This document shows positions 18,147 through 60,928 of a DNA stretch of 64,000 bases, one piece after another. Source of the DNA: Antechinus flavipes (lineage: Eukaryota); assembly GCF_016432865.1 (NCBI RefSeq), contig NC_067402.1, forward strand, positions 296,236,001 through 296,300,000, in the 5' to 3' direction. The position numbers and the translations under genes are program-made. The notes beneath the pieces were generated by a model that searched no databases, had not been told where the DNA came from, and worked only from the letters and a program-made list of their open reading frames with translations. Numbering within the stretch: the stretch's first letter is position 1; each line of letters begins with the position of its first letter.

Positions 18147-18179
<33 letters not shown>

Positions 18180-19364: not shown

Positions 19365-22300
19365 GCTTCAAGTCATTTTTTTTCTGGGTTTGTGTTTTGA
19401 GTGTCCCTGCACTCAAATATAGTTTTTATGATGAGATTTTTTTTTTTTGCTTGCTAATTCTTCCAATCTACTTCCTAGCTTTGGACTTTGTTGGAACCAG
19501 TCTCTGTACAATTTTGAATGGAATGTCNNNNNNNNNNNNNNNNNNNNNNNNNNNNNNNNNNNNNNNNNNNNNNNNNNNNNNNNNNNNNNNNNNNNNNNNN
19601 NNNNNNNNNNNNNNNNNNNNNNNNNNNNNNNNNNNNNNNNNNNNNNNNNNNNNNNNNNNNNNNNNNNNNNNNNNNNNNNNNNNNNNNNNNNNNNNNNNNN
19701 NNNNNNNNNNNNNNNNNNNNNATCTTAGATCAGCCTGCAAAGTTTTTATTGCTCCCAAAGCTGTCTGATATCTGGGTTGGGGTTTGAGCAACACCCCTGT
19801 GAACATGCCCTGTTTGGAGTTCCAGTAGACTGCTATTCCCAGCCAGTTGGGAATCCCTGCTTTTTCAGAGGGATGGAATTTCAAACTCCCTTGAAGTCTG
19901 GGATTCCTGTCTACAGAGGTCTGTCTGAGCTGGGGGCTAAAGCTGAGACTCTGCTTCTCAGCCTGGAGCGTCCCCTGGGGCATAGCTCCCCTCCTGAGTC
20001 GACCCTTGATCAGTGTCCTGCCTCGGGCTGGCATCTGTATCTTCTCAAGTCACGAGAAGTCCTCTTGCTCTGTCTACTGCCTTCCCCTGGGATGGAGAGC
20101 GACACATGGAGGGCTTCTGGCCGCGCTGTGTTCTCAGTGTCTTTGGACCAGAAGCTTCCTCTCTCTCCCCGTGCAAATCTAGGTTAGAAAAAGGATCTGT
20201 GAGATTGCTTTTTGGCCTAGTGGATTTTCCAGATCTCTTTGAAAGTTTCTTCTTACTGCTGCTCTGCAGAAGCTCAAGCTCCCCTTCCACAGCTTTGGTA
20301 GAGTGAAAAAATACAAAACACAACGCAAACCACACTTTTGTGTCTTCTCGGCCTCCTTGAGATGCACGGGATCTTGTCACGTGCTTTGGGGCAGGACCCC
20401 CCCCCCCGAGACCCCTCAGTTACCCTCCACCTGGTTGATGCTGTTAAGATGGTTTTTCAGGGTGCGGCGAATGGGCATGTTTCTTGAAGTTGGGGTGTGC
20501 AGGGCCCTTGCAGAGCCGCTCATCTCCCTTTGCTGTATACCTGCCGCCCACCTCTCCAGGAAATAACTCCCCAGGCTGACTGCCCAGCCTGCCCAGAGCC
20601 TCCCTCGAGATCCACCCCGAGGCCTTGTGCTTTCCCAGGGAGGCTGTATGTGGTCGCACTCACCACGTATCTGTGGTATGTGCTTTCCAAGGCATCCTCG
20701 TAAAACCATGGAAGATGGAAAGTAGGGAAAACCTTAACGCTGTCCAAAGAACTGCAGGATCTCCCAAATGCAGCCTAGTCCCTCCTCCCCCTCTGCGACC
20801 CCTCAGATGTGAACAGCACAATGCCCCCTGCCCGACAGCCGCAGGGGGCCTCCCTCTCCCCTCGTCGTGGCTTCTGAGTCGCGTCTCTCACACAAAGGTG
20901 ACACAAAAGCATCGGGGAGCGAATACACATTTGCCCCTTTGGAGGAATCTTGTATGTTTTTTTATACTGGGAAGCCTTCCGTGGGGCATCTTTCCCTGGC
21001 AGAGGAAATGTGTTCCTGGAGCCCACAAACGGCCCGGTGGGATCATCTCCCCTGGAGACCGCTTCGGCCCTGCCCGTGTCTGCCTGTGCCGCTGGGGCTC
21101 ACGCTCTACCCTCCGCTCCCAGGACTCTGAGTCTGGTGCACGTCCCAGTTTGGGCTCCGCAACCCTTCAGGGAGGGGGGTCTCCCCCTTGTACCTCGTAT
21201 ACCTCCAGGCTCTCCCCGCACCCAGGGGCACTGCCCCCAGCTTCCTCCTCGGGCTCCTGGCATAGATAGGCCTTGGGGCACGGTCTGAGGGCAGCTGTTC
21301 AGGCCCAGAGAGCCCAGGCCACTCCTCTGCTCTCAGCCCCGAGAAGGCCTGCTGGGGCTGGGGGGTATCCCCGGATGGCAGTAGTTGAGCTCAGGCTGAG
21401 ATGGGCCGGCAGGCAGCTGGCTGATGGCGGGCCTCTGGCTTTGACAGGCTCCTCACCGCGGATACTGCAGGAAGCCATGGTTAACATGATAGATACTAAG
21501 ATCTGCAATGGAAGCCGCTGGTATTACGGGTACATTCACCGACACAACCTTTGTGCTGGCTACCAAGAGGGGAAGATCGACACTTGCCAGGTAAGCTGGC
21601 TTTTGGGGGCTCCCCTCAGGGTCTCACGCCCAGGACCCCCCTCTGTCCATCCCCCCCGTACGACAGAGGGGCATCCTTGGGTGCGGTCTCACCCCTAGGC
21701 CAGGGGAGCTCCGCCAGGACCTTCCCCCCTGCTCCAAGTTCCAGGCCGGCCCCCGCTGATGGAGTGTCCTTGTGTCTAGGGGGACAGTGGGGGGCCGCTC
21801 ATGTGCAGAGACAAAGACACCGGCATCTACGTGGTACACGGCGTCACGAGCTGGGGGACCGGCTGCGCCCGGGCCTTCCGGCCGGGCATCTACACATCCA
21901 CCTGGCACTTTCTGGACTGGATCGCGTCCAAGATCGGGCCCGGCTCGGTCATCTCCGACCTACCTCCTCGGACCACGACCCCGCCCCCCCCCACCACCAC
22001 GATCGCCCCCCCTCCCCTTCCCACCAACATTCCCACCACTGCGGTAACTCAACGGCCCTGGAGCTGGATCCCCACTAACAGACCCTGGGAATACAAGCCC
22101 TGGTCCTACTTCTTTATCAGGACCACCACCACCCGAGGCTGGGTCACCCGTTACAAGCCCTGGAAGAGGAGTTCCTCCAACAGTTGGTCTCCGAGCTTCC
22201 AGCCCTTAGCAGGCCCCCTGCCCACTGGCCCATCCATGTACACAGCTCTCCGGCCCTGGATCTCCAATCCGGTGATGGTCAAGTCCCAAGCTGTGGGCCC

Positions 22301-22379
22301 CGGTCAGCCCGTCTCTCTCTCCTTCCCCAAGCGCTTGAAGTTGCTCATGGAATCCATGAAGAGCAGCAGATCCACATAA
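12819..22379 (+). CDS. ACR: Acrosin (proacrosin), 5 exons, 439 aa
   Basis: Exons 12819-12901, 13082-13288, 13870-14156, 21448-21590 and 21780-22379; all GT-AG; phases 2,2,1,0; 1320 nt. Shows a signal peptide, two light-chain Cys (SCSGLCG), R|VVGG activation site, TAAHC, NDIAL, DTCQGDSGGP, the acrosin double Cys [13 protein letters not shown], a Pro-rich tail and [10 protein letters not shown]; adjacent to RABL2 as in eutherians. Confidence 0.96.
13082..13288 (+). CDS. ACR: ACR exon 2 (activation site, catalytic His)
   Basis: ccgccag| ... ag|gtgagt; GLCGQRP...RVVGG...WPW...CGGSLI...TAAHCF. Confidence 0.96.
13520..13830. repeat. CT-rich low-complexity tract including (CT)n, ACR intron 2
   Basis: Pyrimidine-only tract with a long perfect CT run. 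Confidence 0.9.
13870..14156 (+). CDS. ACR: ACR exon 3 (catalytic Asp)
   Basis: ttttcccag| ... g|gtaagc; IIPHERY...ENDIALVQL...CLP...CAVAGWG. Confidence 0.96.
15055..15720 (-). mobile_element. LINE-1 3' end spanning an assembly gap
   Basis: ccccaattacatgtaaaa...gtaagcaatctggtatag...gttgatcatcacataatgttgctg...gctcattttactctgtatcagttc. Confidence 0.7.
15262..15488. other. Assembly gap (227 N)
   Basis: Run of N. Confidence 1.
16200..16453. mobile_element. RTE / Mar1-type remnant
   Basis: cccatttgggattttcttggcaaaaatactggagtggtttaccatttc is the Mar1/RTE-derived signature; left boundary uncertain. Confidence 0.5.
17575..18000 (-). mobile_element. Old LINE-1 3' fragment
   Basis: caaatgtccatattggc...ctggtcacttcactc...cattatttcttacaatac...ttgttcagtcagtccc. 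Confidence 0.55.
18452..18620 (+). mobile_element. WSINE1-type SINE
   Basis: ggggcggctagttggtgcagtggatagaatatcagccctgaagtcaggaggacccgagttc; (CAAAA)n tail; gtaaataa flanks both sides. Confidence 0.85.
18650..19220 (-). mobile_element. Old LINE-1 ORF1-region fragment
   Basis: ttctttgccttccagaatataatattccaagctct...ttgtgtggtcctgactatggctcc matches marsupial L1 ORF1 antisense (recalled). Confidence 0.6.
19318..19365. repeat. (GTT)n microsatellite
   Basis: About 15 perfect units. Confidence 0.95.
19528..19721. other. Assembly gap (194 N)
   Basis: Run of N. Confidence 1.
21448..21590 (+). CDS. ACR: ACR exon 4
   Basis: ttgacag| ... cag|gtaagc; [21 protein letters not shown]...[15 protein letters not shown]. 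Confidence 0.96.
21780..22379 (+). CDS. ACR: ACR exon 5 (catalytic Ser and C-terminal tail)
   Basis: gtctag|ggg gac agt ggg ggg ccg; [19 protein letters not shown]; TAA at 22377-22379. Confidence 0.96.
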
Positions 22380-22468
22380 TGCTCTGTCTGGAGAGAGCTC
22401 TCCATGCGCAGGCCTGGTGCCCGGCTGCCGCCTGGGCCCTCTGCCCTCCACCCCCCGGGGAACAGGTC

Positions 22469-22474
22469 AATAAA
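22469..22474 (+). terminator. ACR polyadenylation signal
   Basis: AATAAA 90 nt after the stop codon. Confidence 0.8.
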
Positions 22475-22817
22475 GTTGTATATGAAGCTGGGCCTGCCTG
22501 CTCGCTCCTGCCTGCATCCTTCACGGCCTTGGCGGGGACCGCCCGGAGGGGCTCAGGGCCCGGGGGAGATAACCCCGATACACACGGCTGTAGGAAGACC
22601 ACCCCTAATAAGCTCCCCCCAAATCCTGCCCTGCAAGACTCTTGGACAACCTCAGGGCTGGATGGGGCAGGGGGCAAGGCAGCCTTTGAGCCCGGAGTTT
22701 CCAGCTTTCCGGGACGACCCCGCTCCTACCACTCCCTAATGGCCACCCAGGACCTGCAGGGATGGCGGATCCTCAGAAGGTCCTTGCGGGCAGCTTGGGT
22801 GGCCCTCAGATGGGGCT

Positions 22818-22954
22818 CCACCGGTCAGGAGGCCCGGTCCCGTCCACCTCCGGCCGGGGGGCCCGGTCCCTCCACCGGTCAGGAGGCCCAGTCCCGTCCA
22901 CCACCGGCCAGGAGGCCCGGTCCCGTCCACCTCCGGCCGGGGGGCCTGGTCCCA
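22818..22954. repeat. GC-rich minisatellite, 5 x 26-29 bp
   Basis: Units tccacc(tcc/acc)ggyc(a/g)gg(a/g)ggccyrgtccc. Confidence 0.85.
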
Positions 22955-23766
22955 TCCCCTGCTGAGCCTCCGCCCCTTCCCCTCAGCCAATCTCCTTGCT
23001 CCAGCCTTTCATCTTTGTTTCCCGTCACTGGGCTTCCAGGCTCTCCTCCCCGCTGGAGGAGGCCACGTGTGGCGGCTGCACGCCCTGCCGTGCGCTGTGC
23101 TCACAACGGGGGGGCTTGCATCAAGCTGCAGACTCTATCTTTGGGGGAAACTTGAACCCAAGCCGCTGGAGCATGAAGATAGCTCAGAAAATTCCCGAGA
23201 AACCTCCAGAGAAATGGGGAGCCAGAGGAAGGCCCATGACCCCCGGGGTGAGGCTGCGGGTTATATGGGAACCCAGAGAGACTGGGATATGGGCAGAGAC
23301 CAGTGCCCGGACTGCGGCTCCCCCCAGAGCTCGGTCCGGGGATGTGGTTCGCCCCCCTCGGCCGCTCTGTCTTGCCGACATCTGCCAAAGGCAGCCCCAG
23401 ACACAAAGCCGAGGCCGCTGGCTTCCCCAGGACATGCCCTGCTGTGGCGGCTTTCATGGGCCTCGGTGGCACCTTGGCAGATCTTCGTTGCCCGGCGCAG
23501 ACAGGAGTGCCCTGCCCCGAGCTGGCTCTGTGGCCGCTCCGTCGATGCGGAGGAGGGGCACGGGGAAGGCCGGCCGCAGGGCTGCCCCCTTCAATGATCC
23601 TGCCCTTGACACCTGGGAGTTCTCCCTCATCCCCGCCATCCCAGCGCCCTCGCTCTCCGCTACGCTTCTGCCCTCCCTTTGGGGAGCAGGACCTTCTCGT
23701 CCCCTTCCAGCTGCAATCCCCGCTTCCTTTTACCATCGCCCTCCTCCTCGGACATGTCTCTGGCCC

Positions 23767-37672: not shown

Positions 37673-38578
37673 TTAAATGCCCATGCACATGACACAGCAG
37701 GACTACAGTATTCGGACATAGCTGATGAGCAGCACAAAGGGGCTGATGGCTGGAAAGCAGAGCATCAAGATAGTAGACACATAATGAAACCAAAAATCAG
37801 GCTTCTTCAAATAACGTTTTCCTAGTTCAAGGCAGATATTGATAAAATAAAAAGAAAGAAAGCTGCTCATCAGCAGCAGGATGGATATGGAGGCCCTGAT
37901 CTCTGGGGAGGCTCTGGGAGGGAGGCTGATTCTGTGCAGGTACTGGACTTGCCGGGAGTGTTTCCTCAGCAGAATCACCATGTAGCCACTTGTCCACACC
38001 ATCAGTCCCACAAAGACCGCATCTCAAAGATAAGTGATGATGATATAATCTGCCAAAGAAGGTTCCCAGGAGCAGTAGAAGAACTCAACAGCCCCCGTCT
38101 GAGTGGGAGGGCCTGGCCTCGGGCCCATCACATGGATGGGCACATCGATGTCTACAAAGAGACTGCCGAGCCAGCAGAGTAGGCAGGAGGGGAGCACGTA
38201 TGTTGGGGCACCTGCTTTGAGCCTGGCAGCCAGGGAGCCGCGAGGACTGATGATGATAGCCTGGAAGCAACTTAACAGGCAAATGGTGCAGATGGAAAGA
38301 TCCCGGCTGACACACTGAAGATACAGGACCATTTTACACCCCAAGTCCTTCAAGAAGTATTTCATCCTCAGCACTGCAATATTCATAGGGATGCTTCTGG
38401 ACATAAGCAACATGGTGTTTGCCAAAGTCAGCTGAATGATAATGAGGTTAACGCACCTCCACCGATGGCCTGTGAGATAAGGAAAGCTACACAGACACAG
38501 GAGAATGGAGTTCCCCAGGACCCCAAATGCTATCTGCAAAAGGAAGATGGTCCCCAGAAACAGGAGGCGAGGAATCAT
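37673..38578 (-). pseudogene. Vomeronasal type-1 receptor (V1R), single exon, in-frame nonsense codon
   Basis: GVLGNSILL, LTLANTMLLMSRSIP, GCKMVLYLQCVSRDLSICTICLLSCFQAIIISP, MVILLRKHSRQVQYLH, CFPAISPFVL. ORFs 38024-38578 and 37703-38011 are in the same frame, separated by TGA (38026-38024); a second TAG at 37705-37703 precedes 9 more codons. Confidence 0.9.
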
Positions 38579-39632
38579 TCTCTTTGTTCTTAGGGAGGAG
38601 AATTAAAGCCAGAGTCAGCAGGACCTGTGTATATCACGGAGGACAGAAGAAAACGAGAACCTTTAACATTCAAACTGAGTGGAAACCAGACAGAAGTACT
38701 AATTATTCACCCTCTGTGCACTCAGCTAGCCAGTCTGAATGGAATTTAAAGACGGGGCTCCAAAGGGGAAAGCACAACAGTAATAGCAGTTCTGGTGTGA
38801 GGACCGGGCAAGTTTGCTCCTTGGTACCTCAAGTGAAGGTTGAAGATCATTTGAGGACCAAAAAGCTGGAGAAATAGTGATGCAAAATTGTGTAACTTTA
38901 GCGTATATATACACCAGAAGGGCAAGGATTTATCAGTTTTTATATCCTCCAATATTTAATACATGTCTGTGCAACAGTGAGTATTTAATTTATTAAATTT
39001 ATGAAAAGTTTATTCAAAGTAAGCATGTCCAACACACTCATATACACGTGCACATATATCGCTCATTACTCATTTCCCATCCTTCCCACCCCTTACCCTG
39101 CAAAATCCCATGGAGACGGAAATGAGCAAAGAGATTGATTTATCCCAGAACAATATCATAAAGACAAAGAGCCATAGGAGTTCCAATCGACGCTATAATT
39201 CCAATGCAATGATCAACCCCAAACCCAGACAAACTTGCCATTCCCCTCCAGATAGAGAAGATACACTCCCCAGAGTGTATGTTGACATGTACTTTGTTGG
39301 ATGGGGTCAGGGCAGGGATTTGTTTTGTTCAGTTATACATATTTTGTTTCTCATTTTCTCATTATGATTGAGGGGAAGTGGAGAGAAATGTGAAAGGTAG
39401 AAAAGATAAATTTTCATTGGCTGAAAAAATTTAGTTGAAGAAAATCTAATGTAGGCACTCTCCTTTCCCATTCTGCCTTCCCAATCAAGAACTGTCTTTG
39501 AAAGCCCTTGGTTCTCTGAGATATGGAAGGGGAAAACCATGACCTTACCCCTCCTAGGTTTGACTCAGTGCCTTTCCTGAACGCAGGCCCTGGCACATTT
39601 CTTCTAAAACTGCTTCCTTCAACCTAAGTTTC

Positions 39633-47600: not shown

Positions 47601-50063
47601 CTTGTACTTATTCTGTTTGGTCCTATATGGTATAATAAACAAACATTTCAGTAAAGGGGCTGCTAAGTGGTGCAGTGGATAGAGCGCCAGCCCTGAAGTG
47701 AGTCTTGTGATCTTATCTCACAAATAGCTTTCCAGCTTCAGATTGATCTCCCCCAGTGAAGGGGAGCCCAATGCCTCATAATGAATTTCAGAAGCTCTTA
47801 CGTATTTTGAATCTTTCTAAAAGATAGCTTTCCTGTTTTTTGAATTGTAATATTCCTCTTTGCAAATTCCACATCTTAATTTTTGAGCTTTCCTCTTTGG
47901 TGAATCACTTCCACACTGGGCACTCCCTCTTCAACTGTTTGAAAATAACAAACAAGCCACATTCAATTTTCTCTCCTCCAAGAAAAAAGAACCCCAGTTC
48001 TTATACCTGACCTTGAGACATGGTCCCATCCACATCATCCTACTCTAGAGGTTCATCCCCAAGGTTTTCTCTCAATACAAAGTCCTGGAATGCTCCCTAA
48101 ATGAAGGAAATGGGATGTATCTAAGGGAAATTACAAGCCGCTGGTAACTGAAGGAAAACAGTTATGAAGGAAAAATCATGCCCATCAGTGAAGCAGATTA
48201 ATAAAAGAGAAACCAAAAAATTAAAAAAGAGAAGAAAAAACTTGTATATTTAGAAAAAGCTGACAAATCAAATCAATTGTGTGATTAAAAAGGGTAGAGA
48301 GAAAGAAACTTACTTCCTGAGGGTCTAACACAGTTGCACAACAAAGTCGGTAAGTTCACACCTTCCATTGTTCCTCAATGTATAAACTCCACAGATGAGA
48401 AGAAATCCCAGAATTCCTGCTGTCTCTGCTAGCCTCCATATAAATGGGCCTCAGGCCACATTGAGAATCACTGGCAGTTTCTCTACATCCCAATTTAGAG
48501 AAGTGGCGTTTTGCTCTCCCTCAAAATATCTCAAGAATCACCTCAGCAAAATTCTCCAGAAAAAAGATACTCCTTATCTGGTAAGTGTTTCATTGATCCA
48601 ATGGATCCTGTTATATGGCTCCATATTTCTGTAGGATAGATATAGAACCAATTTGGCTGAAGCCATCAATGGTCATTTGGGAAGCCCTGGGCAATAACTC
48701 AAAAGTAACAGGAGCCCCCGTTTCTGAGGAAAAATCCAAAACCATTTTTATGTAAATGGTACTGAAGATAGACTCAAAAATTAAGGGTTTTCATCCTGAC
48801 CTTGCGTCTTCCTAGCTGTGGAACCTTGAAGAAACCTCTTTTGCTCACTGGGCCAGTTTTCTTCTCTGTAACATGAGCAAAATAAGACTTTGTCCCTCCA
48901 TAGTCATAAGGATGTTTTGGGGATGGGGAAATGAAAAGGAATAAGCATTTATAAAGAGACCACTGTATGCTAGGCACTCTTCCAAATGCTTTACAAAGGT
49001 TGCACAGTTTATCCTTATAACAATCCTACCAGGTTGGTATTATGATCCCATTTTACAGATGAGGAAATTGAGACTAACCAAAGTAAAGTGAGTTGCACAT
49101 AGTCACAATCTAGGAAACAAATGTGTCTGGCCAGATTTCTCTTAGTTCTTCCTTGCTCCAGGTCCAGTGTTTTATCCACTGGGTCCACATGTCAGTGGTG
49201 GGACTATAGAACAGAAAGGAGAGATATTTTCCGCAGAGACTATAGAAAAGCAGGCAAGAGAGGGGGAAGTTTGACAGGGAATCTGCTACTTAAAGTGGGC
49301 AAGAGGACAGAGCTCTTAATGGATTTTCTTTGAAATGAGTATTTGTGGATTTGTGCTGATAAGGAGGACATGGGGCATTGTTGAAGAGCTGTGCAAGTGG
49401 ACTGACTAAGAAGGGAAACCGTGGGCATGAAGGAGGCAGCTGGGTCTCGGCACATAAAGTCCGGGGGATGAGGTCAGAAAGATGTGAATTCAAATCCACC
49501 TCAGGCACTAGCTGGGTGACTTTTAGCAGGAATTTTAATTTTTGCTTCCCTAACTTTCATCATCATATGAGAATAACAACCATCTCCCAGGGCTGTTATG
49601 AGGATCAGATGAGATAATAATTTTTAAAGCCTTAAATGCCTCTGTGAAGACCGAGTTAGCACCCTGGATGCCCCAGAATCAGCCGGAGTCAGGATACGCA
49701 AAAGTCCTTGGTCTTAATTCTTGGTCTTTAGGGGTAGAAGTAAACAGGATGGACGCAAGTTCTCCACGACCTCCCTTCTCCTCGTCTACTACCAAAGTGA
49801 CTCTGGCTTGTCTTACTCTACCCCCTAATCCTTTTCACAATTCTTTGTATACTCCAATTATCGAGCCAGCACAGAATAGTGGGAAGGACCATTTTCCAAG
49901 CATATGCTAAAAAAGTATTGTCCAATCGGTAGTTAGCCTTAAGTGCTCGGTTGTCCGACCTCAGTGTACCTACTCAGAGTTTCAGCCCTTTACATGCCTC
50001 CACATGATATATGCTAGTTATAATTATTATTATTTCTTGTTCTTCTTTTTTCCTCCTTCCTTC

Positions 50064-50216: not shown

Positions 50217-51310
50217 TTTCTTCCTTAGTTCTAATAATCATTATCATTACTTTTTCATCATACCTTCTGCATTATTACTTCAATTATTGACTGGTATTAT
50301 TTTCAATTTTTCATTAACTTACAATTTTTATCTCAGTTATATATGCATATATACATATATGTGAATTTTTACCCCTTGAAAAATACACACTTAGTAAATT
50401 TGGGCTTCTGTCAGTAGTCCTGAAGACATTTTTAAATGTTAAAATTTCTGAAGATGATAGAAATCAAGGGAACAAGTATTATTTTTCTTTCTTTTTTTTA
50501 AGGGACTTTCCCCCCTCAATAGTAATTTATTTTTCCAAATACAGGTAAAGGTAGTTTTCAACATTTATTTTTGTAAGATTTTATGTTCCAAATTTTTCTC
50601 ACTCCTTCCTTTATCATCTTCTTATCAAGACATCAAGCAATCTGATATATATTCATATATATAACTGAGGCAAAAAATTATAAGTTAATGAATATATATA
50701 TATGAGAATAAGATCTCCTTACCAAGATAGTAAGCAATCTGATATCTATCTATCCATCTATCTATCTCTATATATAATTGAGGTAAAAATGTAAATTAAT
50801 GAAATATATTTATATTATATATAAGAATAAGAATATATTTAATATATATTTGTAAGAATTAGAAATATATATAATTATTGATTCAATTGATGAAGTGCTC
50901 AAAATAATTCTCACATAAATCTTTTTTAAATGTCTAAAGAGTCTGCCCCGATCGCTCAATTTGATTTCATTGGACAAAACAACTCATGAAGTAGATGATG
51001 TACCTGCTACATGCAGGGTTCTTTACCAGGTAGCAAAGTAGCAAGAAAGACCTTGAATATGAACAGTCTGCCTCAAGAAGCCAAAAATTGAAGCAGGAGG
51101 CTGCACCAGGAGCACCAGTAACTTTAACTGAGAGGAGGAAATGATGTAAGTGAGAGGTGGTAGAGATAATCAAAAAAAGGAAAAGAAACTTCCAACCATT
51201 TAGACTGGTGGGGTGAGACGCATTGTCTTTTTTTCAGGTGTTTCTTCATGCAAAAGTATAGACTTTGAATTGAAAAGGGAATACTGATTTTTAATTTCTT
51301 TCTGATTCAG

Positions 51311-51568
51311 GTGAAGCCAATTTAATCAATTTGACCATTAATCCTAGGAAAAAACAAGAACAACCCCCCCAGCATCCACACCCAGAGGCCATCATGCCCA
51401 GCAATCAGCCAGCCAGCTTTCCCAAGAGGCCTCAGAAGACCAGCCAGCTCCGTTTTCAGGGCCAAGAAAAGGACCCAGCACTTCTGAGACCTGAGATGCC
51501 ATCCGTCAACTCCTCAAGAACTTGGAGACAGGACCCTGGAGTTGCACAAAATGCTAGTCAATCACAAG
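51311..51568 (+). CDS. Candidate exon, repeat copy 1 (Pro/Gln-rich, phase 1-1, 258 nt)
   Basis: tttcttctgattcag-type acceptor and cacaag|gtaaaa donor; open frame EANLINLTINPRKKQEQPPQHPHPEAIMPSNQP...AQNASQSQ. Confidence 0.55.
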
Positions 51569-52679
51569 GTAAAATTCTAAAACTCAATCCTGGAAGCCGT
51601 TTAATAAGATCCCCACATTTTAGGAATGCTTTCTGATTTTTCATTTATTCCTTGAACATTCAGTGACAGGAGAATATATAGTTGAACCACAGGCCTAAAG
51701 TCAGAGAACATCCGAGTTGGGAAGGAATTCATAGAAGTTTGAGTTCTGACTCAGTTCTTCCTTCACCCACCCCTGTCCCTGTCCCTGCCCCTGTCCCTGC
51801 CCCTGCCCCTGTCCCTGCCCCTGTCCCTGCCCCTTGATGACACACCTGAAATGGGGGCATGAGGGCTCTGATGGTTGATTATCAGTTGGAAGACAAGGAT
51901 TTGAGTCTTTATAACTTCTGTGACCTCAGGCCCCTCAATTCATTTCTGCGTCCACATGTATAAAGCAAGCCATCCATCAAGGCTTCTATGTGAATTCGTG
52001 ACCCTTGAAAAATACACACTTAGTAAATTTGGGGTCTGTCAATGGTCCTGAAGACATATATATGAGAATAAGATCTCCTTACCAAGATAGCAAGCAATCT
52101 GATATCTATCTATCCATCTATCTATCTCTATATATAATTGAGGTAAAAATGTAAGTTAATGAAATATATTTATATTATATATAAAAGAATAAGGATATGT
52201 TTAATAAATATTTGTAAGAATTAGAAATATATATATAATTATTGACTCAATTGATGACGTGTTCAAAATAATTCTCACATAAATCTTTTTTAAATGTCTA
52301 AAGAGTCTGCCCTGATCACTCAATTTGATTTCATTGGACAAAACAACTCACGAAGTAGATGATGTACCTGCTATATGCAGAGTTCTTTACCAGGTAGCAA
52401 AGTAGCAAGAAAGACCTTAAATATGAACAGTCTGCCTCAAGAAGCTAAAAATTGAAGCAGGAGGCTGCACCAGGAGCACCAGTAACTTTAACTCAGAGGA
52501 AGAAATGATGTTGTGTGAGTGAGAGGTGGTAGAGATAATCAAAAAAAGGAAAAGAAACTTCCAACCATTTAGATTGGTGGGGTGAGACGCATTTACTTTT
52601 TTTCAGGTGTTTCTTCATGCAAAAGTATAGTCTTTGAATTGAAAAGGGAATACTGATTTTTAATTTCTTTCCAATTCAG

Positions 52680-52928
52680 GTGAAGCCAATTTGACCATTA
52701 ATTCTAGGAAAAAACAAAAACAACCCCACCAGCATCCACACCCAGAGGCCATCATGCCCAGCAATCAGCCAGCCAGCTTTCCCAAGAGGCCTCAGCAGAC
52801 CAGCCAACTCCGTTTTCAGGGCCAAGAAAAGGACCCAGCACTTTTGAGACCTGAGATGCCATCAGTCAACTCCTCAAGAACTTGGAGACAGGACCCCGGA
52901 GTTGCACAAAATGCTGGCCAATCACAAG
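52680..52928 (+). CDS. Candidate exon, repeat copy 2 (249 nt)
   Basis: ccaattcag| ... cacaag|gtaaaa; same open frame. Confidence 0.55.
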
Positions 52929-54064
52929 GTAAAATTCTAAAGCCCAATCCTGGAAGCCGTTTAATAAGATCCCCACATTTTAGGAATGCTTTCTGATTTT
53001 TCATTTAGTCCTTGAACCTGATAATCCATTCAGTGACAGGAGGATATATAATTGAACCACAGGCCTAAAGTCAGAGAAGATCCGACTTGGGGAGGATTCC
53101 ATAGAAGTTTGAGTTCTGACTCAGTTCTTCCTTCACCCGCCCCTGCCCCTTGATGACACACCTGAAATGGAGGCATGAGGGCTCTGATGGCTGATTATCA
53201 TTTGGAAGACAAGGGTTTGAGACAAGGAACAAGCATTATTTTTCTTTTTTTTAAGGGACTTTCCCCCTGGAAAAGTATTTTATTTTTCCAAATACAGGTA
53301 AAGGTAGTTTTCAACATTTATTTTTATAAGATTTTATGTTCCAAATTTTTTCTCACTTCTTCCTTTATCATCTTCTTATCAAGACATCAAGCAATCTGAT
53401 ATATATGCATATATATAATTGAGGAAAAAATTATAAGTTAATGAAATATATATATGCGAATAAGATCTCCTTACCAAGATAGCAAGCAATCTGATATCTA
53501 TCTATCCATCTATCTATCTCTATATATAATTGAGGTAAAAATGTAAGTTAATGAAGTATATATATATAAGAATAAAAATATATTTAACAAATATATGTAA
53601 GAATTAGAAATATATATAATTATTGATTCAATTGATGAAGTGCTCAAAATAGTTCTCACATAAATCTTTTTTAAATGTCTAAAGAGTCTTCCCTGATCAC
53701 TCAATTTGATTTCATTGGACAACACAACTCATGAAGTAGATGATGTACCTGCTACATGCAGGGTTCTTTACCAGGTAGCAAAGTAGCAAGAAAGACCTTG
53801 AATATGATCAGTCTGCCTCAAGAAGCCAAAAACTGAAGCAGGAGGCTGCACCAGGAGCACCAGTAACTTTAACTCAGAGGAGGAAATGATGTTGTAAGTG
53901 AGAGGTGGTAGAGATAATCAAAAAAAAAAAGAAAAGAAACTTCCAACCATTTAGATTGGTGGGGTGAGACGTATTTTCTTTTTTTTTTCAGGTGTTTCTT
54001 CATGCAAAAGTATAGCCTTTGAATTGAAAAGGGAATACTGATTTTTAATTTTTTTCCAATTCAG

Positions 54065-54313
54065 GTGAAGCCAATTTGACCATTAATTCTAGGAAAAAAC
54101 AAAAACAACCCCCCCAGCATCCACACCCAGAGGCCATCATGCCCAGCAATCAGCCAGCCAGCTTTCCCAAGAGGCCTCAGCAGACCAGCCAGCTCCGTTT
54201 TCAGGGCCAAGAAAAGGACCCGGCACTTCTGAGACCTGAGATGCCATCCGTCAACTCCTCAAGAACTTGGAGACAGGACCCCGGAATTGCACAAAATGCT
54301 GATCAATCACAAG
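54065..54313 (+). CDS. Candidate exon, repeat copy 3 (249 nt)
   Basis: ccaattcag| ... cacaag|gtaaaa; same open frame. Confidence 0.55.
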
Positions 54314-54699
54314 GTAAAATTCTAAAGCCCAATCCTGGAAGCCGTTTAATAAGATTTATTCCTTGAACCTGATAATCCATTCAGTGACAGGAGAATATAC
54401 AGTTGAACCACAGGCCTAAAGTCAGAGAACATCTGAGTTGGGAAGGAATTCATAAAAGTTTGAGTTCTGACTCAGTTCTTCCTTCACCCGCCCCTGCCCC
54501 TTGATGACACACCTGAACTGGAGGCATGAGGGCTCTGATGGTTGATTATCAGTTGGAAGACAAAGGTTTGAGTCTTTATAACTTCTGTGGCCTCAGGCTC
54601 CTCAATTCAGTTCTTCATCCACATGTATAAAGCAAGCCATCCATCAAGGCTTCTTTATGAATTCTTGACCCTTGAAAAGCACATACTTAGTACATATAC

Positions 54700-56110
54700 C
54701 CAATATTCTATCTCTACAATATATCCTCAAGCACGCATTTGATCACATCATTCCCACATTCAGTAAACTCCAGTAGCTTCTGATTACCTTCAGCATCAAG
54801 TATAAAACCCTCTGATTGGTGTTCAAAGCCCTTCAGAATCTAGCACCTCCTACCTTTCCAGTCATCTTGCCCAGCTTCTCCACCTACTCTTTGATTCATA
54901 GTCACTGGCTTCTTTGTTGTTCCTCCTTCAAAACACTCCACCTCCAGATTGGACATTTTCACTGGCTATCATTCATCTTCAGAATTCCCTCTTTTCTCTC
55001 TTTTGGTTTCCTTTCAGTGTCCTTAAAATCCCACCTTCCACAGGAAGGCTTTTCTAATCCCTCTTATTTTTATTGCCTTCATTTTTTTAGTTTTTTCTTA
55101 CTTAACCTATTTATAATTTGTTTGTATATAATTGTTTTTTTTTCTATTTAGATTATGAGCTCGTCAAAGACAGGGATTAGCTTGTGCTTTCATTTGTAAC
55201 TCCACCCAAAGCACTTAGCTGATCAAATAGTAGGCATTTAACATATCTAACATATATAGATAGGACTGCTTGCCATCTGGGGGAGGGGGTAGAGGGAGGG
55301 AGGGGAAAAATCGGAACAGAAGCAAGTACAAGGGATAATGTTGTTAAAAAAAATTACCCTAGCATGGATTCTGTCAACATAAAGTTATTATTAAATAAAA
55401 TATTAAAATAATAATAATAATAAATAGGCATTTAGCAAACGTTTCTATCCCTTTCCCTCAAATCACAGGACCTGACGCTAAATCAAGGGATCATCACCTC
55501 TCAATCAGACTATATTCCCATCTCTTCCTATTTTTCAGTCTCTTCTTTCTCCAATCCATCTTCCACATAGCTGCCAATATGATTTTCCTAATGCATGAGT
55601 CTGACTGCATCATTGCCCTGCTTAAAAAAAAAAAATATCTAGGAGCTCTCTACTGCCCCAAATCACTTATGAACTCCTCTTGATGGCATTTCAATCTCTT
55701 CCCAACCTGATTCCTTCCTGAATATAATCACTCCCCTTCTCACTCTCTACTGACCAGCCGCACTGACCCTTTTTGCCATTCCCTATGTATATGACACTCT
55801 GCCTTTCCACTGGTTGTACTTTGTGCCTGGAATGCTCTTTCTCTCCCTCACTTCAATAAAGAAGTTTCTGGCGGACTTAAAAACTCAATCAAATCACCAT
55901 GTTTATCCCCCACCCCAGACTTCCTGTGGCTACTTAGGACCCTTTTTTGCACATACTTTGAGAAGTGTGTGTCAGTACTCCATAGACAGAATGCAAACTC
56001 CTCAAAGGCAGGGACTCGTTCATATCCAGAGCTCTTGTCCATCCCCGTACCTGGCACAATGCCCTCAACACAGATCTTGCTGATTCTTGGCCAATTGATT
56101 AATTGCTCTA
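54700..56110 (+). mobile_element. L2 fragments (two decayed pieces)
   Basis: ttcaaagcccttcagaatctagcacctcctacc; caggaaggcttttctaatcc; cctggcacaatgcc; boundaries approximate. Confidence 0.6.
55241..55424 (+). mobile_element. Short young L1 3' end inserted into an L2 tail
   Basis: TSD TAGGCATTTA at 55231-55240 and 55425-55434. Confidence 0.8.
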
Positions 56111-56125
56111 TTTCTTCCCATGCAG

Positions 56126-56328
56126 GTGTTCCAAGAAGCTCAAATAACAAGACCGCTCTTACAACGCACCCAATTTATCCCTCTGCGGCTGAGATCCACA
56201 AAATGACATATGAACAAGTTGTAAGCTCCATCCTCCAGTTTCTTGGGAACGATCCACAGTACATGGCATCTGTGGACCCCAAACAACAAAAACTGTCAAA
56301 ATCATCCAAGGGGACACAGAATCGCAAG
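56126..56328 (+). CDS. Candidate unique exon (phase 1-0, 203 nt)
   Basis: tttcttcccatgcag| ... cgcaag|gtaact; open in the phase-1 frame VPRSSNNKT...AEIHKMTYEQVVSSILQFLGNDPQY...GTQNRK. Confidence 0.5.
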
Positions 56329-56348
56329 GTAACTTTCCCACACAAAGC

Positions 56349-57495
56349 TTAGAGAATTTTCAGTATGAATTCAATCTAGATGTCCTTTTTTTTTTTTCAG
56401 ATTTTTTTCATTTATTGAGTTTTATTATATTGACAAATTTATTGAGTTTGATTATATTGATAAAAATACCATTATAGTCAAATAGGAAACGGGATGGCTT
56501 TGGTGTTCCAGTGTTTGCCTTCAGATCCTGGTTGTGATGATTGAATGGTCAAGCACAGTAGATAGGTCTTGGGGCCACATTTCCTCAAAAGCAAAATGAC
56601 CGGCTTGGACAGTTGGCTTCTAAGGATCCTTCCAACAATTTAAGAGTTATTAACTCGTTGTAGTCAAATATTGTTTTTGTTCATCTCAAAACTTGATTTT
56701 GAGAAGGGTTTCATCTGATTGCCAAGGAGCACCATGACACCCCTTGTTCACACTTTAATCTGTCCTCCACTGATGGGCTTCCAAAGTTATTTCCCTAAGC
56801 AAGCTCTGATTTTCATTAAGTGAATTTCAGGATTCTGTTGTTTCTAGGATAAAAAACATCCCAATCCTTCCATAACCAGCCCCTTTTTTCACCTTTCTCC
56901 TGTTTAAGAGAAAATGTTGAAGAGACAATATTTGTAGATAAACTGTGCCTAGCACAGTACTGGCACAAAAATGGGCATTTAAGACCCTATTCCTTTTCCT
57001 TCCTTCCTCCTTTTTTTCCCCTCTCATTTCCCTTTGTCCCTCCTTAGCTCCTTTCTTTCCTTACTATTTTCTTCCCTCTTTCCTTTTTTGTCTGTGTTCC
57101 ATGTCTGTGTTAGGCCTGACAAAAGTAGGTATTTAAGACCCTATCCCCTTTCTTCCCTTCCTCCTTCCTTTTTTCCTCATTTCCCTTTGTCCTTCCCTAG
57201 TTCCTTTCTTTCCTTTCTTTTTTTCCCTTTCCTCTTTTGTTTTTTGTCCTTCCTTTTCTTCCTCCTTCCCTCTCTCCCTCCCTTATTTCCTTTTTGATCC
57301 AGCTATCATTGCCTACTTGCTTTTCCTCACATAATACTCCACCTCTCATCTCGGTCTTTGGCCTGACTGTGCCCCATGCACATTAGAGGATTTTCAGTAT
57401 GAATTCAATCTAGATATCCTTTTTTTTTCAGATTTTTTTCATTTATTGAGTTTTATTATGTTGACAAATTTATTGAGTTTGATTATATTGATAAA
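56349..57495 (+). repeat. Dispersed direct repeat of about 115 bp (56349-56464 and 57383-57495)
   Basis: ttagagaattttcagtatgaattcaatctagat...attgataaa present twice. Confidence 0.9.
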
Positions 57496-58569
57496 GCAAT
57501 GCTTTGCTTTCCTCACCTCTTCTTAGCTTCTCTGAATTGCCTCAAGATTCATCCCAAACCTTACCTTCAGCAGGAGGCTTTTCCCAATCACCTCAGCTGC
57601 TAGGGCCTTCCCCTCCCAGATTATCTTCAATTTCTACTGCATCATTGTTATATGTTCCCCATTTGTGCATACTTCCATTAGACTGTGAGCTCTGTGAGAG
57701 TAGGCACTCTCTTGTATTCTCTTGTCCCCAATTGATTAGGACATTAGGAGGAAGATCATTTGTCAACTTACTATTACACACATGGATGGCAAGGCTCTAG
57801 CATGGGGAGAGGACAGGTTGAGGGACACAATTAAAGGCTTCTAAAGGGTTAAATTGGATGGTGCCCATGAGGCATGGTCCAGAACAGAGAGTCAAAGACA
57901 AATTATTCAATTCAACAAATGTTTATTAAATACTGACCTGATGCTTTCAGGCTCTTATGGAGAGCAGACCTGCTGCTACCTCAGTTTTTAGTGTATCTTT
58001 GGATCAACTGGCATAGCCAGGTCTACCAGTCATGAGCATAACTAATACGAAAGGGAACAATCCAGTTTGCTGACATTCCCTAACTCTGGCTTTCTCTGTT
58101 TAATTCTTGAATCAAAGGAGTCTCTGGCATGGGATTGGTCAAATTGTAACACAAGGTCTACAGGTGCTTCAGTTTTGTGGTACCATACCTTTATTAGGCA
58201 GGGCAGGGGAAACAAGATAAGAATAGGGAGGATTCTAAGGAAGGGCTACTTGAGTTGAATAAGGCTTTCCTTCAAGTTCTGGAATTTGCTTCTACTACAG
58301 GAATTTTAAGATTTTAACTATTGAATCCACTTGTCAATGATTACAAGCATATTTATAGTCAAAGGAAAAGAATTCACTATTAAATAAACTTGTCCATCAA
58401 TTTATGACAATGTAAGCAGGATGACCTTTGTGAAGTCGTTAGCAATTAGGGAAAATCAGGGATCATGAATTACAATATCAACTTCTTCATCCATGTCATG
58501 ACTAAGATTCAGCTAGGATTAGTGACTTAAAGATTATTTTTCTCTCCTTGGCATCTTCCACTTCTCTCT

Positions 58570-58916
58570 GATGAAGGAAAAAGGCTTTCCCTTAATTACT
58601 CACAATCACAGGATTTCTTTTCACTCTGAATTCTCTGATAATAGAGAGGTTCTTGGTAAAGTCTCTCCATGTCCATTGCAACCAAAAGGATTTCACTCTA
58701 TGAGGCAGCTGGTGATATACAATAAGCATTACCCATAGGTCAAAGATTTTCCCACAGAATTTTCACCCAAAACACTCAAAAGGTTGATTTCCCAAGTAAA
58801 TGTTATGATTCCTTATAGGGGATGAACTGCTACTGAAAGCCTTTCCACAGTTATTCCACAGAGAGGGCTTTCTTCCAATATTGTGATGAAGGTTTTTCCA
58901 CAAGCATTCATTTATA
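58570..58916 (-). pseudogene. Decayed zinc-finger relics downstream of the ZNF stop codon
   Basis: Frameshifted remnants such as NNCGKAFSSSSSPIRNHNIYLGNQPFECFG and gggaaagccttt. Confidence 0.6.
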
Positions 58917-60820
58917 TTATTTTTCATCAGTATGAATTTTCTGGTGTTCTGTGAGGATTCCCTTCTGATTGTAGGATTTCCCACATTCAGTGCTTTCAGA
59001 GGGTTTCTCTCTGGCATGAGTTCTCTGATGTATGGCAAGATTTACACGGTGCCTAAATGTCACCCCACATTGAGGGCAATGAAAGAGTCTCTTTCCAGTG
59101 TGAATTATCTGGTGTGACTTGAGAGATGAACCTGTAGCAAAAGCTTTCCCACAATCGTCACATCCATATGGCTTCTCTCCAGTGTGACTTCTCTTATGAT
59201 CAATAAGGGCTGCCCCTCGGTCAAAGCCTTTTCCACACTCATTACATTCAAAGGGCTTCTCACCAGTATGAATTCTCTGGTGTACGGTAAGGTTTCCTTT
59301 TTGGCTAAAGGCTTTTCCACATATATGACACCCAAAGGGTTTCTCTCCAGTATGAATTAATTGATGGGATCTAAGGGTTGAGGTACTCTTGAAGGTTTTC
59401 CCACATTCATTACATTCATAAGGTTTCTCCCCAGTATGAATCTTCTTATGCTCAGTGAGAACTGTCCTCCAGTTAAAGCTTTTCCCACATTCATTACAAG
59501 TGAAAGGTTTCTCTCCAGTATGAATTCTCATGTGTTCAATAAGGGTAACTCTCTGGCTAAAGGCTTTCCCACATTCATTACAATCAAAGGCTTTTTCTCC
59601 AGTATGGGTTCTCTGATGTTTAATGAGGTTGCCTCGCTGATTGAAAGCTATCCCACATTCACTGCATTCAAATGGTTTCTTTCCAGTATGAATTAGTTGA
59701 TGCCTTTTGAGGGACATGCATTTGCTGAAGACTTTCCCACAATCATTACATTTGTAAAGTTTCTCTCCAGTATGAATTCTTTTGTGCTCAATAAGTCTTT
59801 CCCTCTGGCTGAAGGTTTTCTTACATTCACCACATTCGAAAAATTTCTCTTTGGAATGAATCCTCTGATGCATGGTAAAGTTCCCTCTTTGGTTAAAGAA
59901 CATCCCACATTCGCTGCACTCAAAGCTTTTCTTTGAAGTATGACTTTTCTGATGTGTCCTGAGGGCTGAACGATTGCTAAAGGTTTTCACACAATCATTA
60001 CATCCGTATGGCTTTTCTCCTGTATGAATTCTCTTATGTCCCATAAGGTTTGTCTTCCGATTGAAGCTTTTCCCACATTCATTACATGTAAAAGGCTTCT
60101 CACCAGTATGAATTCTCTTATGTTCAATAAGGCTTCCCCTCTGAATGAAAGCTTTCCCACATTCATCACATTCAAAGGGCTTCTCTCCAGTATGAATTCG
60201 TTGATGTTTAGTGAGGTTTCCCTTCTGAGTAAATGCTCTCCCACAATCATTGCATTCAAAGGGTTTATTTCCAGTATGAATTAACTGATGTTTCCTTAAG
60301 GATGAGCTATTCCCAAGGACTTTCCCACAGTCACTACATTCAAATAACTTTGTATTTTTGTGCTTTCTTTGACAGTGAATGGGATCTGGATGACAACTAG
60401 AGGAATCGCTGTACCTATCACACTTAAAAACCTTCTTCCCTGAGGAGTTTCTATTCAACTGAATTAGGTCAGAAAATGGTTTGAAATTCTTCCTATATGT
60501 AGCATATTTCTGAAAACTTCTTCCTGTACGAATCATTGGCAATGAATTAAAGGATGATTCCACACTGGAGCTTTGCTCCAGTGGATTGTATTCATTGAAA
60601 AAACGATCAGTTTTTTCACCTGTTATGGTTAGCTGCCTGGATTGTCTTTTCTTGCTCTCAATCTGTCTCTCTAATCTAACAGGATATTTCCAGACTTCTC
60701 CAAATCTGGAGTCCCAGATTTCATGCTTTGCAAGATTTTGCATGGATAATTCTCTTACAGAAATGCTCTCTTCTGGAGTCAGCTCTTTAGTTGGATACTT
60801 CTCCTTCTGTTTACAGAAAT
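58917..60820 (-). CDS. Final exon of a C2H2 (probably KRAB) zinc-finger gene: 16 intact and 2 degenerate fingers; 5' exons not found in the window
   Basis: Acceptor ttttttctcctttcag| at 60821, phase 1, open frame through TAA at 58919-58917; TGEKP linkers. KRAB is inferred from the exon architecture only. Confidence 0.92.
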
Positions 60821-60928
60821 CTGAAAGGAGAAAAAAGCAAAGTCAACATTGACTGGTCCCAATTACTTACTAAATATGAATGCTTCACATATTAGAGTCC
60901 ATCTCCTTCATTAAGAGGGATAATTATC

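What the first reader, a model, noticed from the sequence alone, without database searches (positions are those of the whole stretch)
50360..56328. Candidate undescribed gene expanding by tandem intron-exon module duplication
Each of three tandem units contains an exon with a polypyrimidine-AG acceptor and an AG|GTAAAA donor. All three are symmetric phase 1-1 (258, 249 and 249 nt) and open in that frame, so they can be concatenated or skipped without a frameshift. The only indel within the exons is an in-frame 9-bp duplication, while the flanking intron copies carry many indels. Among the three copies I count 7 nonsynonymous and 6 synonymous variable sites, more synonymous than the roughly 3:1 neutral expectation, although the numbers are small. 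A unique exon at 56126-56328 accepts the same phase and adds a helical-looking segment (AEIHKMTYEQVVSSILQFLG). The product would be three 83-86 aa Pro/Gln/Ser-rich, probably disordered repeats with a basic RKKQ patch, followed by a small folded domain. An in-frame ATG with A at -3 lies at 51394. I recognise no homologue. The architecture recalls lineage-specific repeat-domain genes such as NBPF/Olduvai (analogy only). The first and last exons are unresolved.
Basis: partly seen in the sequence, partly recalled or inferred. Interest (0 to 1): 0.82.

Follow-up and report, generated by a model that had tools for sequence, protein, structure and literature searches.

The report
Young marsupial gene growing by exon-module duplication
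The three repeated exon modules are real and belong to a gene that automatic annotation already lists, unnamed and unstudied, in the yellow-footed antechinus and the Tasmanian devil; the antechinus has three modules and the devil two, and the protein looks young, floppy and fast-changing, so this is a tidy example of a gene growing by exon duplication rather than a new kind of thing.

Summary

The gene is not unannotated. RefSeq lists it as LOC127539010 in Antechinus flavipes. Isoform X2 (226 aa) skips unit 2.

The Tasmanian devil orthologue, LOC116419675, has two units. Both species share the first duplication junction. The U2|U3 junction is antechinus-only, so the array grew from 2 to 3 units.

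I resolved the ends:
- The annotated ATG is at 51141.
- The last exon starts at 60376, antisense inside a zinc-finger gene's coding exon.
- Antechinus lacks 1.73 kb that holds the devil's exon 5, so exon 4 splices straight onto a TGA.

Selection is weak. Between species dN/dS is 0.6-1.2, and the exons diverge as fast as the introns. The frame is still intact in all seven exon copies, and the only exon indels are 9 and 3 nt.

AlphaFold2 predicts disorder plus one short helix. I found no homologue outside these two dasyurids and no paper. The scan noted a different tandem exon amplification (PMFBP1) elsewhere in this genome.

The parts
48441..48581 (+). Candidate non-coding first exon. A TATAAA-like box sits at about 48444 and a CTG|GTAAGT donor at 48581/48582. 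Speculative; not shown to belong to this gene.
   Evidence: Sequence read. The box, the donor and 40 nt after the donor are conserved in the devil, but overall identity (90%) is no better than background.
50360..52060 (+). Tandem unit U1. Full-length unit; contains a (CCCCTG)n expansion at 51770-51834.
51141..51145 (+). End of the upstream mini-exon that holds the RefSeq start codon (ATGAT|gtaagt). Its 5' boundary is unknown; a possible acceptor lies at 51030/51031.
   Evidence: The CDS span of P0009 in L002 (10001-19238) maps to window 51141-60378. The protein begins MMKKQEQ.
51311..51568 (+). Repeat exon 1 (258 nt, phase 1-1). The RefSeq antechinus models enter it at an internal acceptor, with 51348 as first base. 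The conserved in-frame ATG at 51394 corresponds to the devil's annotated start.
51990..53221 (+). Tandem unit U2. It lacks about 260 nt of the unit head and about 150 nt of the tail.
52680..52928 (+). Repeat exon 2 (249 nt, phase 1-1). Included in isoform X1, skipped in X2.
53222..54695 (+). Tandem unit U3. The antechinus-specific junction ...GGTTTGAG|ACAAGGAACAAG... lies at about 53221/53222.
54065..54313 (+). Repeat exon 3 (249 nt, phase 1-1).
56126..56328 (+). Unique exon 4 (203 nt, phase 1 in, phase 0 out). It encodes the only predicted helical stretch of the protein.
57770..57782 (+). Site where antechinus lacks the 1.73 kb present in the devil (L001 17507-19236). That segment holds the devil's exon 5 (LQETMTQVPKKRTKNETH).
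60376..60400 (+). Start of the terminal exon (acceptor ...ctttctttgacag|TGA). In antechinus the TGA at 60376-60378 ends the reading frame. In the devil the identical letters are read as (H)EWDLDDN*. The 3' end of the exon is unknown.
58920..60842 (-). Large C2H2 zinc-finger coding exon of the neighbouring gene on the opposite strand. The terminal exon above lies inside it, antisense.

Best explanation
This is a real, spliced gene that, as far as the searchable protein databases show, is restricted to dasyurid marsupials. It is LOC127539010 in Antechinus flavipes and LOC116419675 in the Tasmanian devil. Its coding region is built mostly from a 1.4-1.6 kb genomic module. Each module holds one symmetric phase 1-1 exon of 83-86 codons. 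Because the exon is symmetric, any number of modules can be spliced in or skipped without breaking the frame, and both species have isoform models that do each. The common ancestor already had two modules, since the duplication junction is shared. The antechinus lineage added a third by a second duplication of about 1.44 kb within the array, with a different junction that shows microhomology. Copies within a species have since been partly homogenised. The product is a Cys-free, basic (pI about 10), Gln/Pro/Ser-rich protein that is almost wholly disordered. It has a K/R patch in each repeat and one short amphipathic helical stretch from exon 4. It evolves at close to the neutral rate, and in antechinus it has lost its last 25 residues through deletion of exon 5. 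I infer, without proof, that it is translated and acts as a flexible basic protein with several equivalent units, perhaps nuclear, whose dosage of repeats is tuned by copy number and exon skipping. Shown here: the anatomy, the orthology, the duplication history and the weak constraint. Inferred: translation and any function.
For: - Anatomy.
- Independent gene models with exactly these junctions in two species, each with inclusion and skipping isoforms.
- The window is identical to the annotated A. flavipes locus.
- The devil has two units plus the same exon 4 and terminal exon.
- The D1|D2 junction matches U1|U2, and the U2|U3 junction is unique to antechinus.
- Frame preservation. Only the coding frame is open in all seven exon copies. 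Exon indels are 9 and 3 nt, while 19 of 24 intron indel events are not multiples of three. At the intron rate, about 4.8 frameshifting events would be expected in the exon, giving P about 0.008 for seeing none. The chance of no stop arising among about 44 substitutions is 0.07-0.10.
- Splice sites and the ATG at 51394 are conserved in all five repeat copies.
- Predicted disorder plus a helical stretch at residues 262-288, pLDDT about 83.
- pI and composition.
Against: - dN/dS between species is 0.57-0.91 for the repeats and 1.16 for exon 4.
- The repeat exon is 89.5% identical between species against about 92-93% for flanking non-coding DNA. Exon 4, at 95.1%, is not significantly above background.
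- Variable-site density among the three antechinus copies is the same in exon and flanks (5.2% against 6.7%, P = 0.46).
- A whole coding exon has been lost in antechinus.
- No homologue was found outside the two dasyurids in 1.84 billion representative proteins or in the word-indexed searches.
- No transcript-derived protein from public read assemblies turned up, so RNA support rests on my assumption that RefSeq isoform models reflect RNA-seq.
- The intron indels used as the yardstick sit largely in A/T-rich simple sequence, which inflates the expectation for the exon.
Confidence: 0.65

Rival explanations
1. The locus is transcribed and spliced, but the open frame is not a selected protein. 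It would be a young non-coding or 'proto-gene' transcript, partly antisense to the zinc-finger gene, and automatic annotation gave it a coding sequence because an open frame happens to persist in recently duplicated DNA.
For: - dN/dS is near 1 and the exons diverge as fast as or faster than the introns.
- Exon and flank do not differ among the paralogues.
- Antechinus has lost exon 5, and with it 25 C-terminal residues.
- No homologue beyond two close species.
- No Pfam domain.
- The model is mostly disordered.
- Keeping an open frame through substitutions alone is not unlikely by chance (P about 0.07-0.17).
Against: - There is no frameshifting indel in about 1.7 kb of exon sequence summed over seven copies, while the introns are full of them.
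- Exactly one frame is open in every copy.
- The start codon and its context are conserved in all copies.
- Exon G+C stands well above the upstream flank.
- Many accepted young or reproductive genes also show dN/dS near 1 (general knowledge).
Confidence: 0.3
2. The three units are an assembly artefact: one or two real units were expanded by mis-assembly, or haplotypes were laid side by side.
For: All antechinus sequence seen here comes from one assembly: L002 is identical to the window. Tandem repeats of about 1.4 kb can be mis-assembled.
Against: - The units differ by 4-5% in substitutions and by many private indels. These include a 54-nt microsatellite expansion in U1 only, a 35-nt deletion in U3 only, and different unit boundaries.
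- The independent devil assembly has two units that are 8% apart.
- The RefSeq X1 protein carries the copy-specific residues of all three exons.
- There are no N runs in this region.
Confidence: 0.03

Closest known systems
Tandem exon duplication with symmetric exons, the general class (for example the two-exon kringle IV-2 modules of LPA, or the nebulin and titin repeat exons). From general knowledge.
   Same: A genomic unit of intron plus exon is copied head to tail. The exon is symmetric in phase, so copies are added to or dropped from the mRNA in frame. Copy number differs between related species.
   Different: Only 2-3 copies. The exon encodes disordered low-complexity sequence rather than a folded domain. 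The host gene has no relatives outside one marsupial family, and purifying selection cannot be demonstrated.
NBPF / Olduvai (DUF1220) domain amplification in primates
   Same: Repeated coding modules in an otherwise poorly understood gene are amplified in a lineage-specific way.
   Different: There is no sequence or domain relationship: no Pfam hit of any kind. The scale is far smaller. Olduvai units are two-exon doublets in a multigene family, whereas this is a single-exon module in a gene for which the protein searches found no paralogue.
Lineage-restricted 'orphan' or young genes encoding basic, disordered proteins (reviewed in PMC12684174, title and abstract only, seen)
   Same: No detectable homologue beyond close relatives, predicted intrinsic disorder, near-neutral evolution, a short reading frame.
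   Different: Origin (de novo or diverged beyond recognition) is untested here, because no marsupial genomes outside the two loci could be searched. Expression pattern is unknown.
AP2-associated protein kinase 1 (AAK1), the automatic RefSeq name of isoform X1
   Same: At most a Gln/Pro-rich composition, which I presume is the source of the automatic name (inference).
   Different: No protein-kinase domain or any other Pfam match in the 309-aa product. The sister isoform and the devil orthologue are both named 'uncharacterized protein'. The name is misleading.
Tandem amplification of a symmetric exon in marsupial PMFBP1
   Same: Same genome and the same kind of event: head-to-tail copies of one symmetric exon with its intron.
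   Different: A different gene on another piece of the genome, phase 0, more than 20 old copies, inside a conserved and named gene.

Membership tests
Tandemly duplicated symmetric-exon gene (structural class) | Head-to-tail genomic units, each carrying one copy of the exon with its splice sites | tested here: met
   Three units in antechinus and two in the devil. AG acceptor and GTAAAA donor are intact in all five.
Tandemly duplicated symmetric-exon gene (structural class) | Exon length a multiple of three with equal entry and exit phase, so that copies concatenate or skip in frame | tested here: met
   258, 249, 249, 255 and 258 nt, all phase 1-1. Only that frame is open.
Tandemly duplicated symmetric-exon gene (structural class) | Copies actually joined in mature transcripts | tested here: inconclusive
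   RefSeq protein models in both species join or skip the copies. No RNA reads or transcript assemblies could be examined, and searches that could have found transcript-derived proteins found none.
Lineage-restricted (orphan) gene | No homologue outside a narrow clade | tested here: inconclusive
   Only the devil cluster matched exon 4 among 1.84 billion representatives; the other five hits are microbial Kelch-repeat proteins. Only devil and antechinus proteins matched the full length. The genomes of other marsupials could not be searched.
Protein-coding gene under purifying selection | dN/dS clearly below 1, with exons more conserved than introns | tested here: not met
   dN/dS is 0.57-0.91 for the repeats and 1.16 for exon 4. 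Repeat exon identity is 89.5% against 92-93% in the introns.
Protein-coding gene under purifying selection | Reading frame kept free of frameshifts and stops across copies and species | tested here: met
   No stop and no indel other than multiples of three in seven exon copies. P about 0.008 for the indels at the intron rate.
AAK1 / Ser-Thr protein kinases | Protein kinase catalytic domain | tested here: not met
   No Pkinase hit, and no other hit above its cut-off, in P0009 or P0007.
NBPF / Olduvai (DUF1220) | Olduvai/DUF1220 domain sequence | tested here: not met
   No Pfam family reached its cut-off for any exon peptide or full product.
SCAN domain (my own first impression of the EIH..EQ..L.QFL motif) | Match to the SCAN domain profile | tested here: not met
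   No SCAN hit in Pfam at E up to 1.

The most novel reading that the evidence does not exclude
This is a gene born in or near the dasyurid ancestor. It is still being built: modules are added (2 to 3), copies are homogenised by gene conversion, and amino-acid changes are driven through all copies. Six of the seven substitutions that separate all antechinus copies from all devil copies are nonsynonymous, and such fixed differences are about 3.5 times denser in the exon than in the intron. Its terminal coding exon was recruited from the antisense strand of a KRAB-type zinc-finger coding exon. This would be a live example of a protein gene assembling itself from non-coding and antisense DNA under positive rather than purifying selection.
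Probability: 0.2. Interest if true: 0.6.

Novelty: new member of a known kind. Interest (0 to 1): 0.36.

Why it matters
The anatomy and history now rest on evidence, so the locus is a compact, datable case of a gene lengthening by duplication of an intron-exon module: two units in the devil, three in the antechinus, with both duplication junctions readable. It also shows two rarer things. A splice junction creates the stop codon after an exon was deleted. A terminal coding exon lies antisense inside another gene's coding exon. If the protein proves functional, it would be a handy model for how young disordered proteins tolerate changes in copy number and loss of the C-terminus. In practical terms, the RefSeq name 'AP2-associated protein kinase 1-like' for isoform X1 is misleading and should not be propagated.

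Tried and rejected
- **Pfam.** Scans of each exon peptide and of the full products found nothing above any cut-off. That rules out SCAN, Olduvai and kinase membership.
- **Kelch hits.** The five non-marsupial hits to exon 4 (P0002-P0006, E from 2e-7 to 2e-4) are long microbial Kelch-repeat proteins. They match a motif of about 30 residues several times over. I treat them as chance similarity inflated by repetition.
- **Word-indexed search with one repeat peptide.** It found no candidate, so no short reading frames from public read assemblies carry this sequence.
- **Exact look-up of the devil X2 protein.** It found no contig because only the longest isoform is indexed. The X1 look-up worked.
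- **Scan of 56329-58950 for a further phase-0 exon.** It gave only SINE-like or low-complexity frames. The devil comparison then showed why: exon 5 is absent and the last exon lies at 60376.
- **BLASTN of a unit against the rest of the window.** Only weak simple-sequence matches, so there is no sign that the exon derives from a dispersed repeat present in the window.
- **Tree-like reading of the five units.** It failed. Distances and site patterns are star-like and mosaic, so I dated the events by their junctions instead.
- **Literature.** Searches for the two LOC identifiers found nothing. Two broader searches gave only general background.


Full report
**1. What is in the sequence**

Repeat finding and a three-way alignment confirm three head-to-tail units: U1 50360-52060, U2 about 51990-53221, U3 53222-54695. 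Each holds an exon-like segment with a polypyrimidine-AG acceptor and a CAAG|GTAAAA donor. The segments are 51311-51568 (258 nt), 52680-52928 (249 nt) and 54065-54313 (249 nt).

They translate without stops in phase 1-1 to 82-85 residue Gln/Pro/Ser-rich peptides. The other two frames hold 2-5 stops in every copy. The unique exon 56126-56328 is open in the matching phase. Exon G+C is 0.50-0.52, against 0.33 upstream and 0.45 downstream of the U1 exon.

**2. It is an annotated gene**

An exhaustive HMMER search of 1.84 billion representative proteins with the exon-4 peptide gave one real hit (E = 8e-30). Its cluster holds XP_031796905.1 and XP_031796903.1, "uncharacterized protein LOC116419675" isoforms X2 (150 aa, one repeat) and X1 (236 aa, two repeats).

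Searching with X1 found the antechinus proteins:
- XP_051818888.1, LOC127539010 isoform X2, 226 aa, built from U1 and U3.
- XP_051818887.1, isoform X1, 309 aa, built from U1, U2 and U3, and auto-named "AP2-associated protein kinase 1-like".

The antechinus locus fetched for X1 (L002, GCA_016432865.2) is letter-for-letter the window, with 0 mismatches in 22,860 nt. So the window is Antechinus flavipes and the gene is already in RefSeq. There is no kinase domain or any other Pfam domain, so the name is misleading. I found no paper that mentions either locus identifier.

**3. The unresolved ends**

The annotated antechinus CDS spans window 51141-60378.

*5' end.* The CDS starts in a mini-exon that ends ATGAT|gtaagt at 51145. 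It enters repeat exon 1 at an internal acceptor, with 51348 as first base, giving MMKKQEQ.... That ATG and its context are invariant in all five repeat copies.

*3' end.* The devil protein continues through a 53-nt exon 5 (L001 18772-18824, LQETMTQVPKKRTKNET plus two bases). It ends in a terminal exon that reads T GAA TGG GAT CTG GAT GAC AAC TAG. The same terminal exon is at window 60376 onward, behind a good acceptor.

Antechinus lacks 1.73 kb (devil 17507-19236) that contains exon 5. The flanks abut at about window 57776. The missing stretch in the devil is a patchwork of unique sequence, SINE-like pieces and microsatellites. A deletion in the antechinus lineage is therefore more likely than an insertion in the devil; this is an inference, because I had no outgroup. 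Exon 4 ends in phase 0 and the terminal exon begins T|GAA. Direct splicing therefore reads ...AAG|TGA, and the protein stops at ...GTQNRK, exactly as the RefSeq proteins do.

*Antisense overlap.* The terminal exon lies antisense inside the 641-codon C2H2 zinc-finger exon 58920-60842 on the minus strand. The devil shows the same overlap.

*Possible first exon.* A non-coding first exon may lie at 48441-48581, with a TATAAA-like box and a GTAAGT donor, both conserved in the devil. Nothing ties it to this gene.

**4. History of the modules**

The devil has two units about 1.6 kb apart, plus the first 270-290 nt of a further unit. The tail-to-head junction D1|D2 is the same as U1|U2, so the first duplication predates the split of the two species.

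The U2|U3 junction is different. Unit position about 1546 abuts position about 110 (...GGTTTGAG|ACAAGGAACAAG...), with similar short motifs on both sides. This is the signature of a second tandem duplication of about 1.44 kb within the array, in the antechinus lineage. U2 and U3 also share the 9-nt exon deletion.

Distances are not tree-like:

| Comparison | Intron divergence |
|---|---|
| Antechinus copies with each other | 4.4-5.5% |
| Devil copies with each other | 7.9% |
| Between species | 5.8-8.9% |

Site patterns are mosaic. Substitutions that separate all antechinus copies from all devil copies number 7 in 249 exon sites, against 7 in roughly 900 intron sites. By my reading, six of the seven exon changes alter the amino acid. 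This points to gene conversion between copies, perhaps with selection, but the counts are small.

**5. Is the protein selected?**

Evidence against constraint:
- Among the antechinus paralogues, variable sites are as dense in the exon (5.2%) as in the flanks (6.7%), P = 0.46.
- Between species, dN/dS is 0.57-0.91 for the repeats. For exon 4 it is 1.16, from 8 nonsynonymous and 2 synonymous changes.
- The repeat exon is 89.5% identical between species, while surrounding non-coding DNA is 92-93% identical. Exon 4 is 95.1% and the zinc-finger exon is 96.8%.

Evidence for constraint on the frame:
- No stop occurs in seven exon copies. By chance this has P about 0.07-0.17.
- The only exon indels are 9 and 3 nt, while 19 of 24 intron indel events are not multiples of three. 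About 4.8 frameshifting events would be expected in the exon, giving P about 0.008 for seeing none. This is inflated somewhat because the intron indels cluster in simple sequence.

**6. The product**

AlphaFold2 was run on the four-sequence alignment. It gives mean pLDDT 46, with everything disordered except helices at residues 262-266, 270-283 and 285-288, where pLDDT is about 83. This is the AEIHKMTYEQVVSSILQFLGNDPQY stretch. The proteins have pI 9.7-10.3, no cysteine, and Q, P and S as the most common residues. This is one short helical stretch, not a folded domain.

**7. Verdict**

It is supported by automatic gene models in two separately assembled and annotated species. The claim of expansion is supported by comparison with the devil. 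The claims of being undescribed, of purifying selection and of a folded domain need to be toned down.

The most likely reading is a young, weakly constrained, dasyurid-restricted gene for a basic disordered repeat protein (about 0.65). The main rival is a spliced transcript whose reading frame is not a selected protein (about 0.3). Transcription itself rests on my assumption that RefSeq isoform models reflect RNA-seq, because no transcript data could be reached with these tools.

Noticed in passing
window 21780-23150 (+): The last exon of an acrosin (ACR) gene. It holds the GDSGGP serine-protease C-terminus, whose best solved-structure matches are beta-acrosin heavy chains (E = 6e-23, against 1e-12 for other proteases). 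A long Pro-rich open frame follows. The gene studied here lies about 28 kb downstream of this sperm protease.
   Followed up: partly
window 37706-38602 (-): A V1R-type vomeronasal receptor reading frame (Pfam V1R, E = 3e-38). One in-frame stop at 38024-38026 splits it into pieces of 192 and 106 codons. It is probably a pseudogene, or else a sequencing error.
   Followed up: partly
window 58920-60842 (-), continuing beyond the window end in L002: A zinc-finger gene with about 17 C2H2 fingers (annotated products 725 aa in antechinus, 734 aa in the devil). Its finger exon is 96.8% identical between the two species, clearly above the 92-93% background. Its 3' end lies inside the last intron of the gene studied here, on the opposite strand.
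   Followed up: partly
window 51770-51834: A (CCCCTG)n / 18-nt microsatellite is expanded to about 11 hexamers in unit U1 only. U2, U3 and devil D2 have about two hexamers and devil D1 about five. This is a private marker showing that the units are distinct copies.
   Followed up: yes
window 51141-51146, 52506-52520, 53886-53897; L001 about 9745: Every tandem unit carries its own copy of the upstream mini-exon with an ATG and a GTAAGT- or GTGAGT-type donor, about 165-200 nt before the repeat exon. In U3 and in devil D1 the ATG would also be in frame if spliced to the internal acceptor (MMLKKQ... and MLKKQ...). Each unit might therefore serve as an alternative start module. Untested.
   Followed up: partly
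window 135-807 (-): Open frames with LINE-type reverse-transcriptase sequence (...[11 protein letters not shown]...) at the start of the window. An ordinary retrotransposon fragment.
   Followed up: no
   Followed up: no
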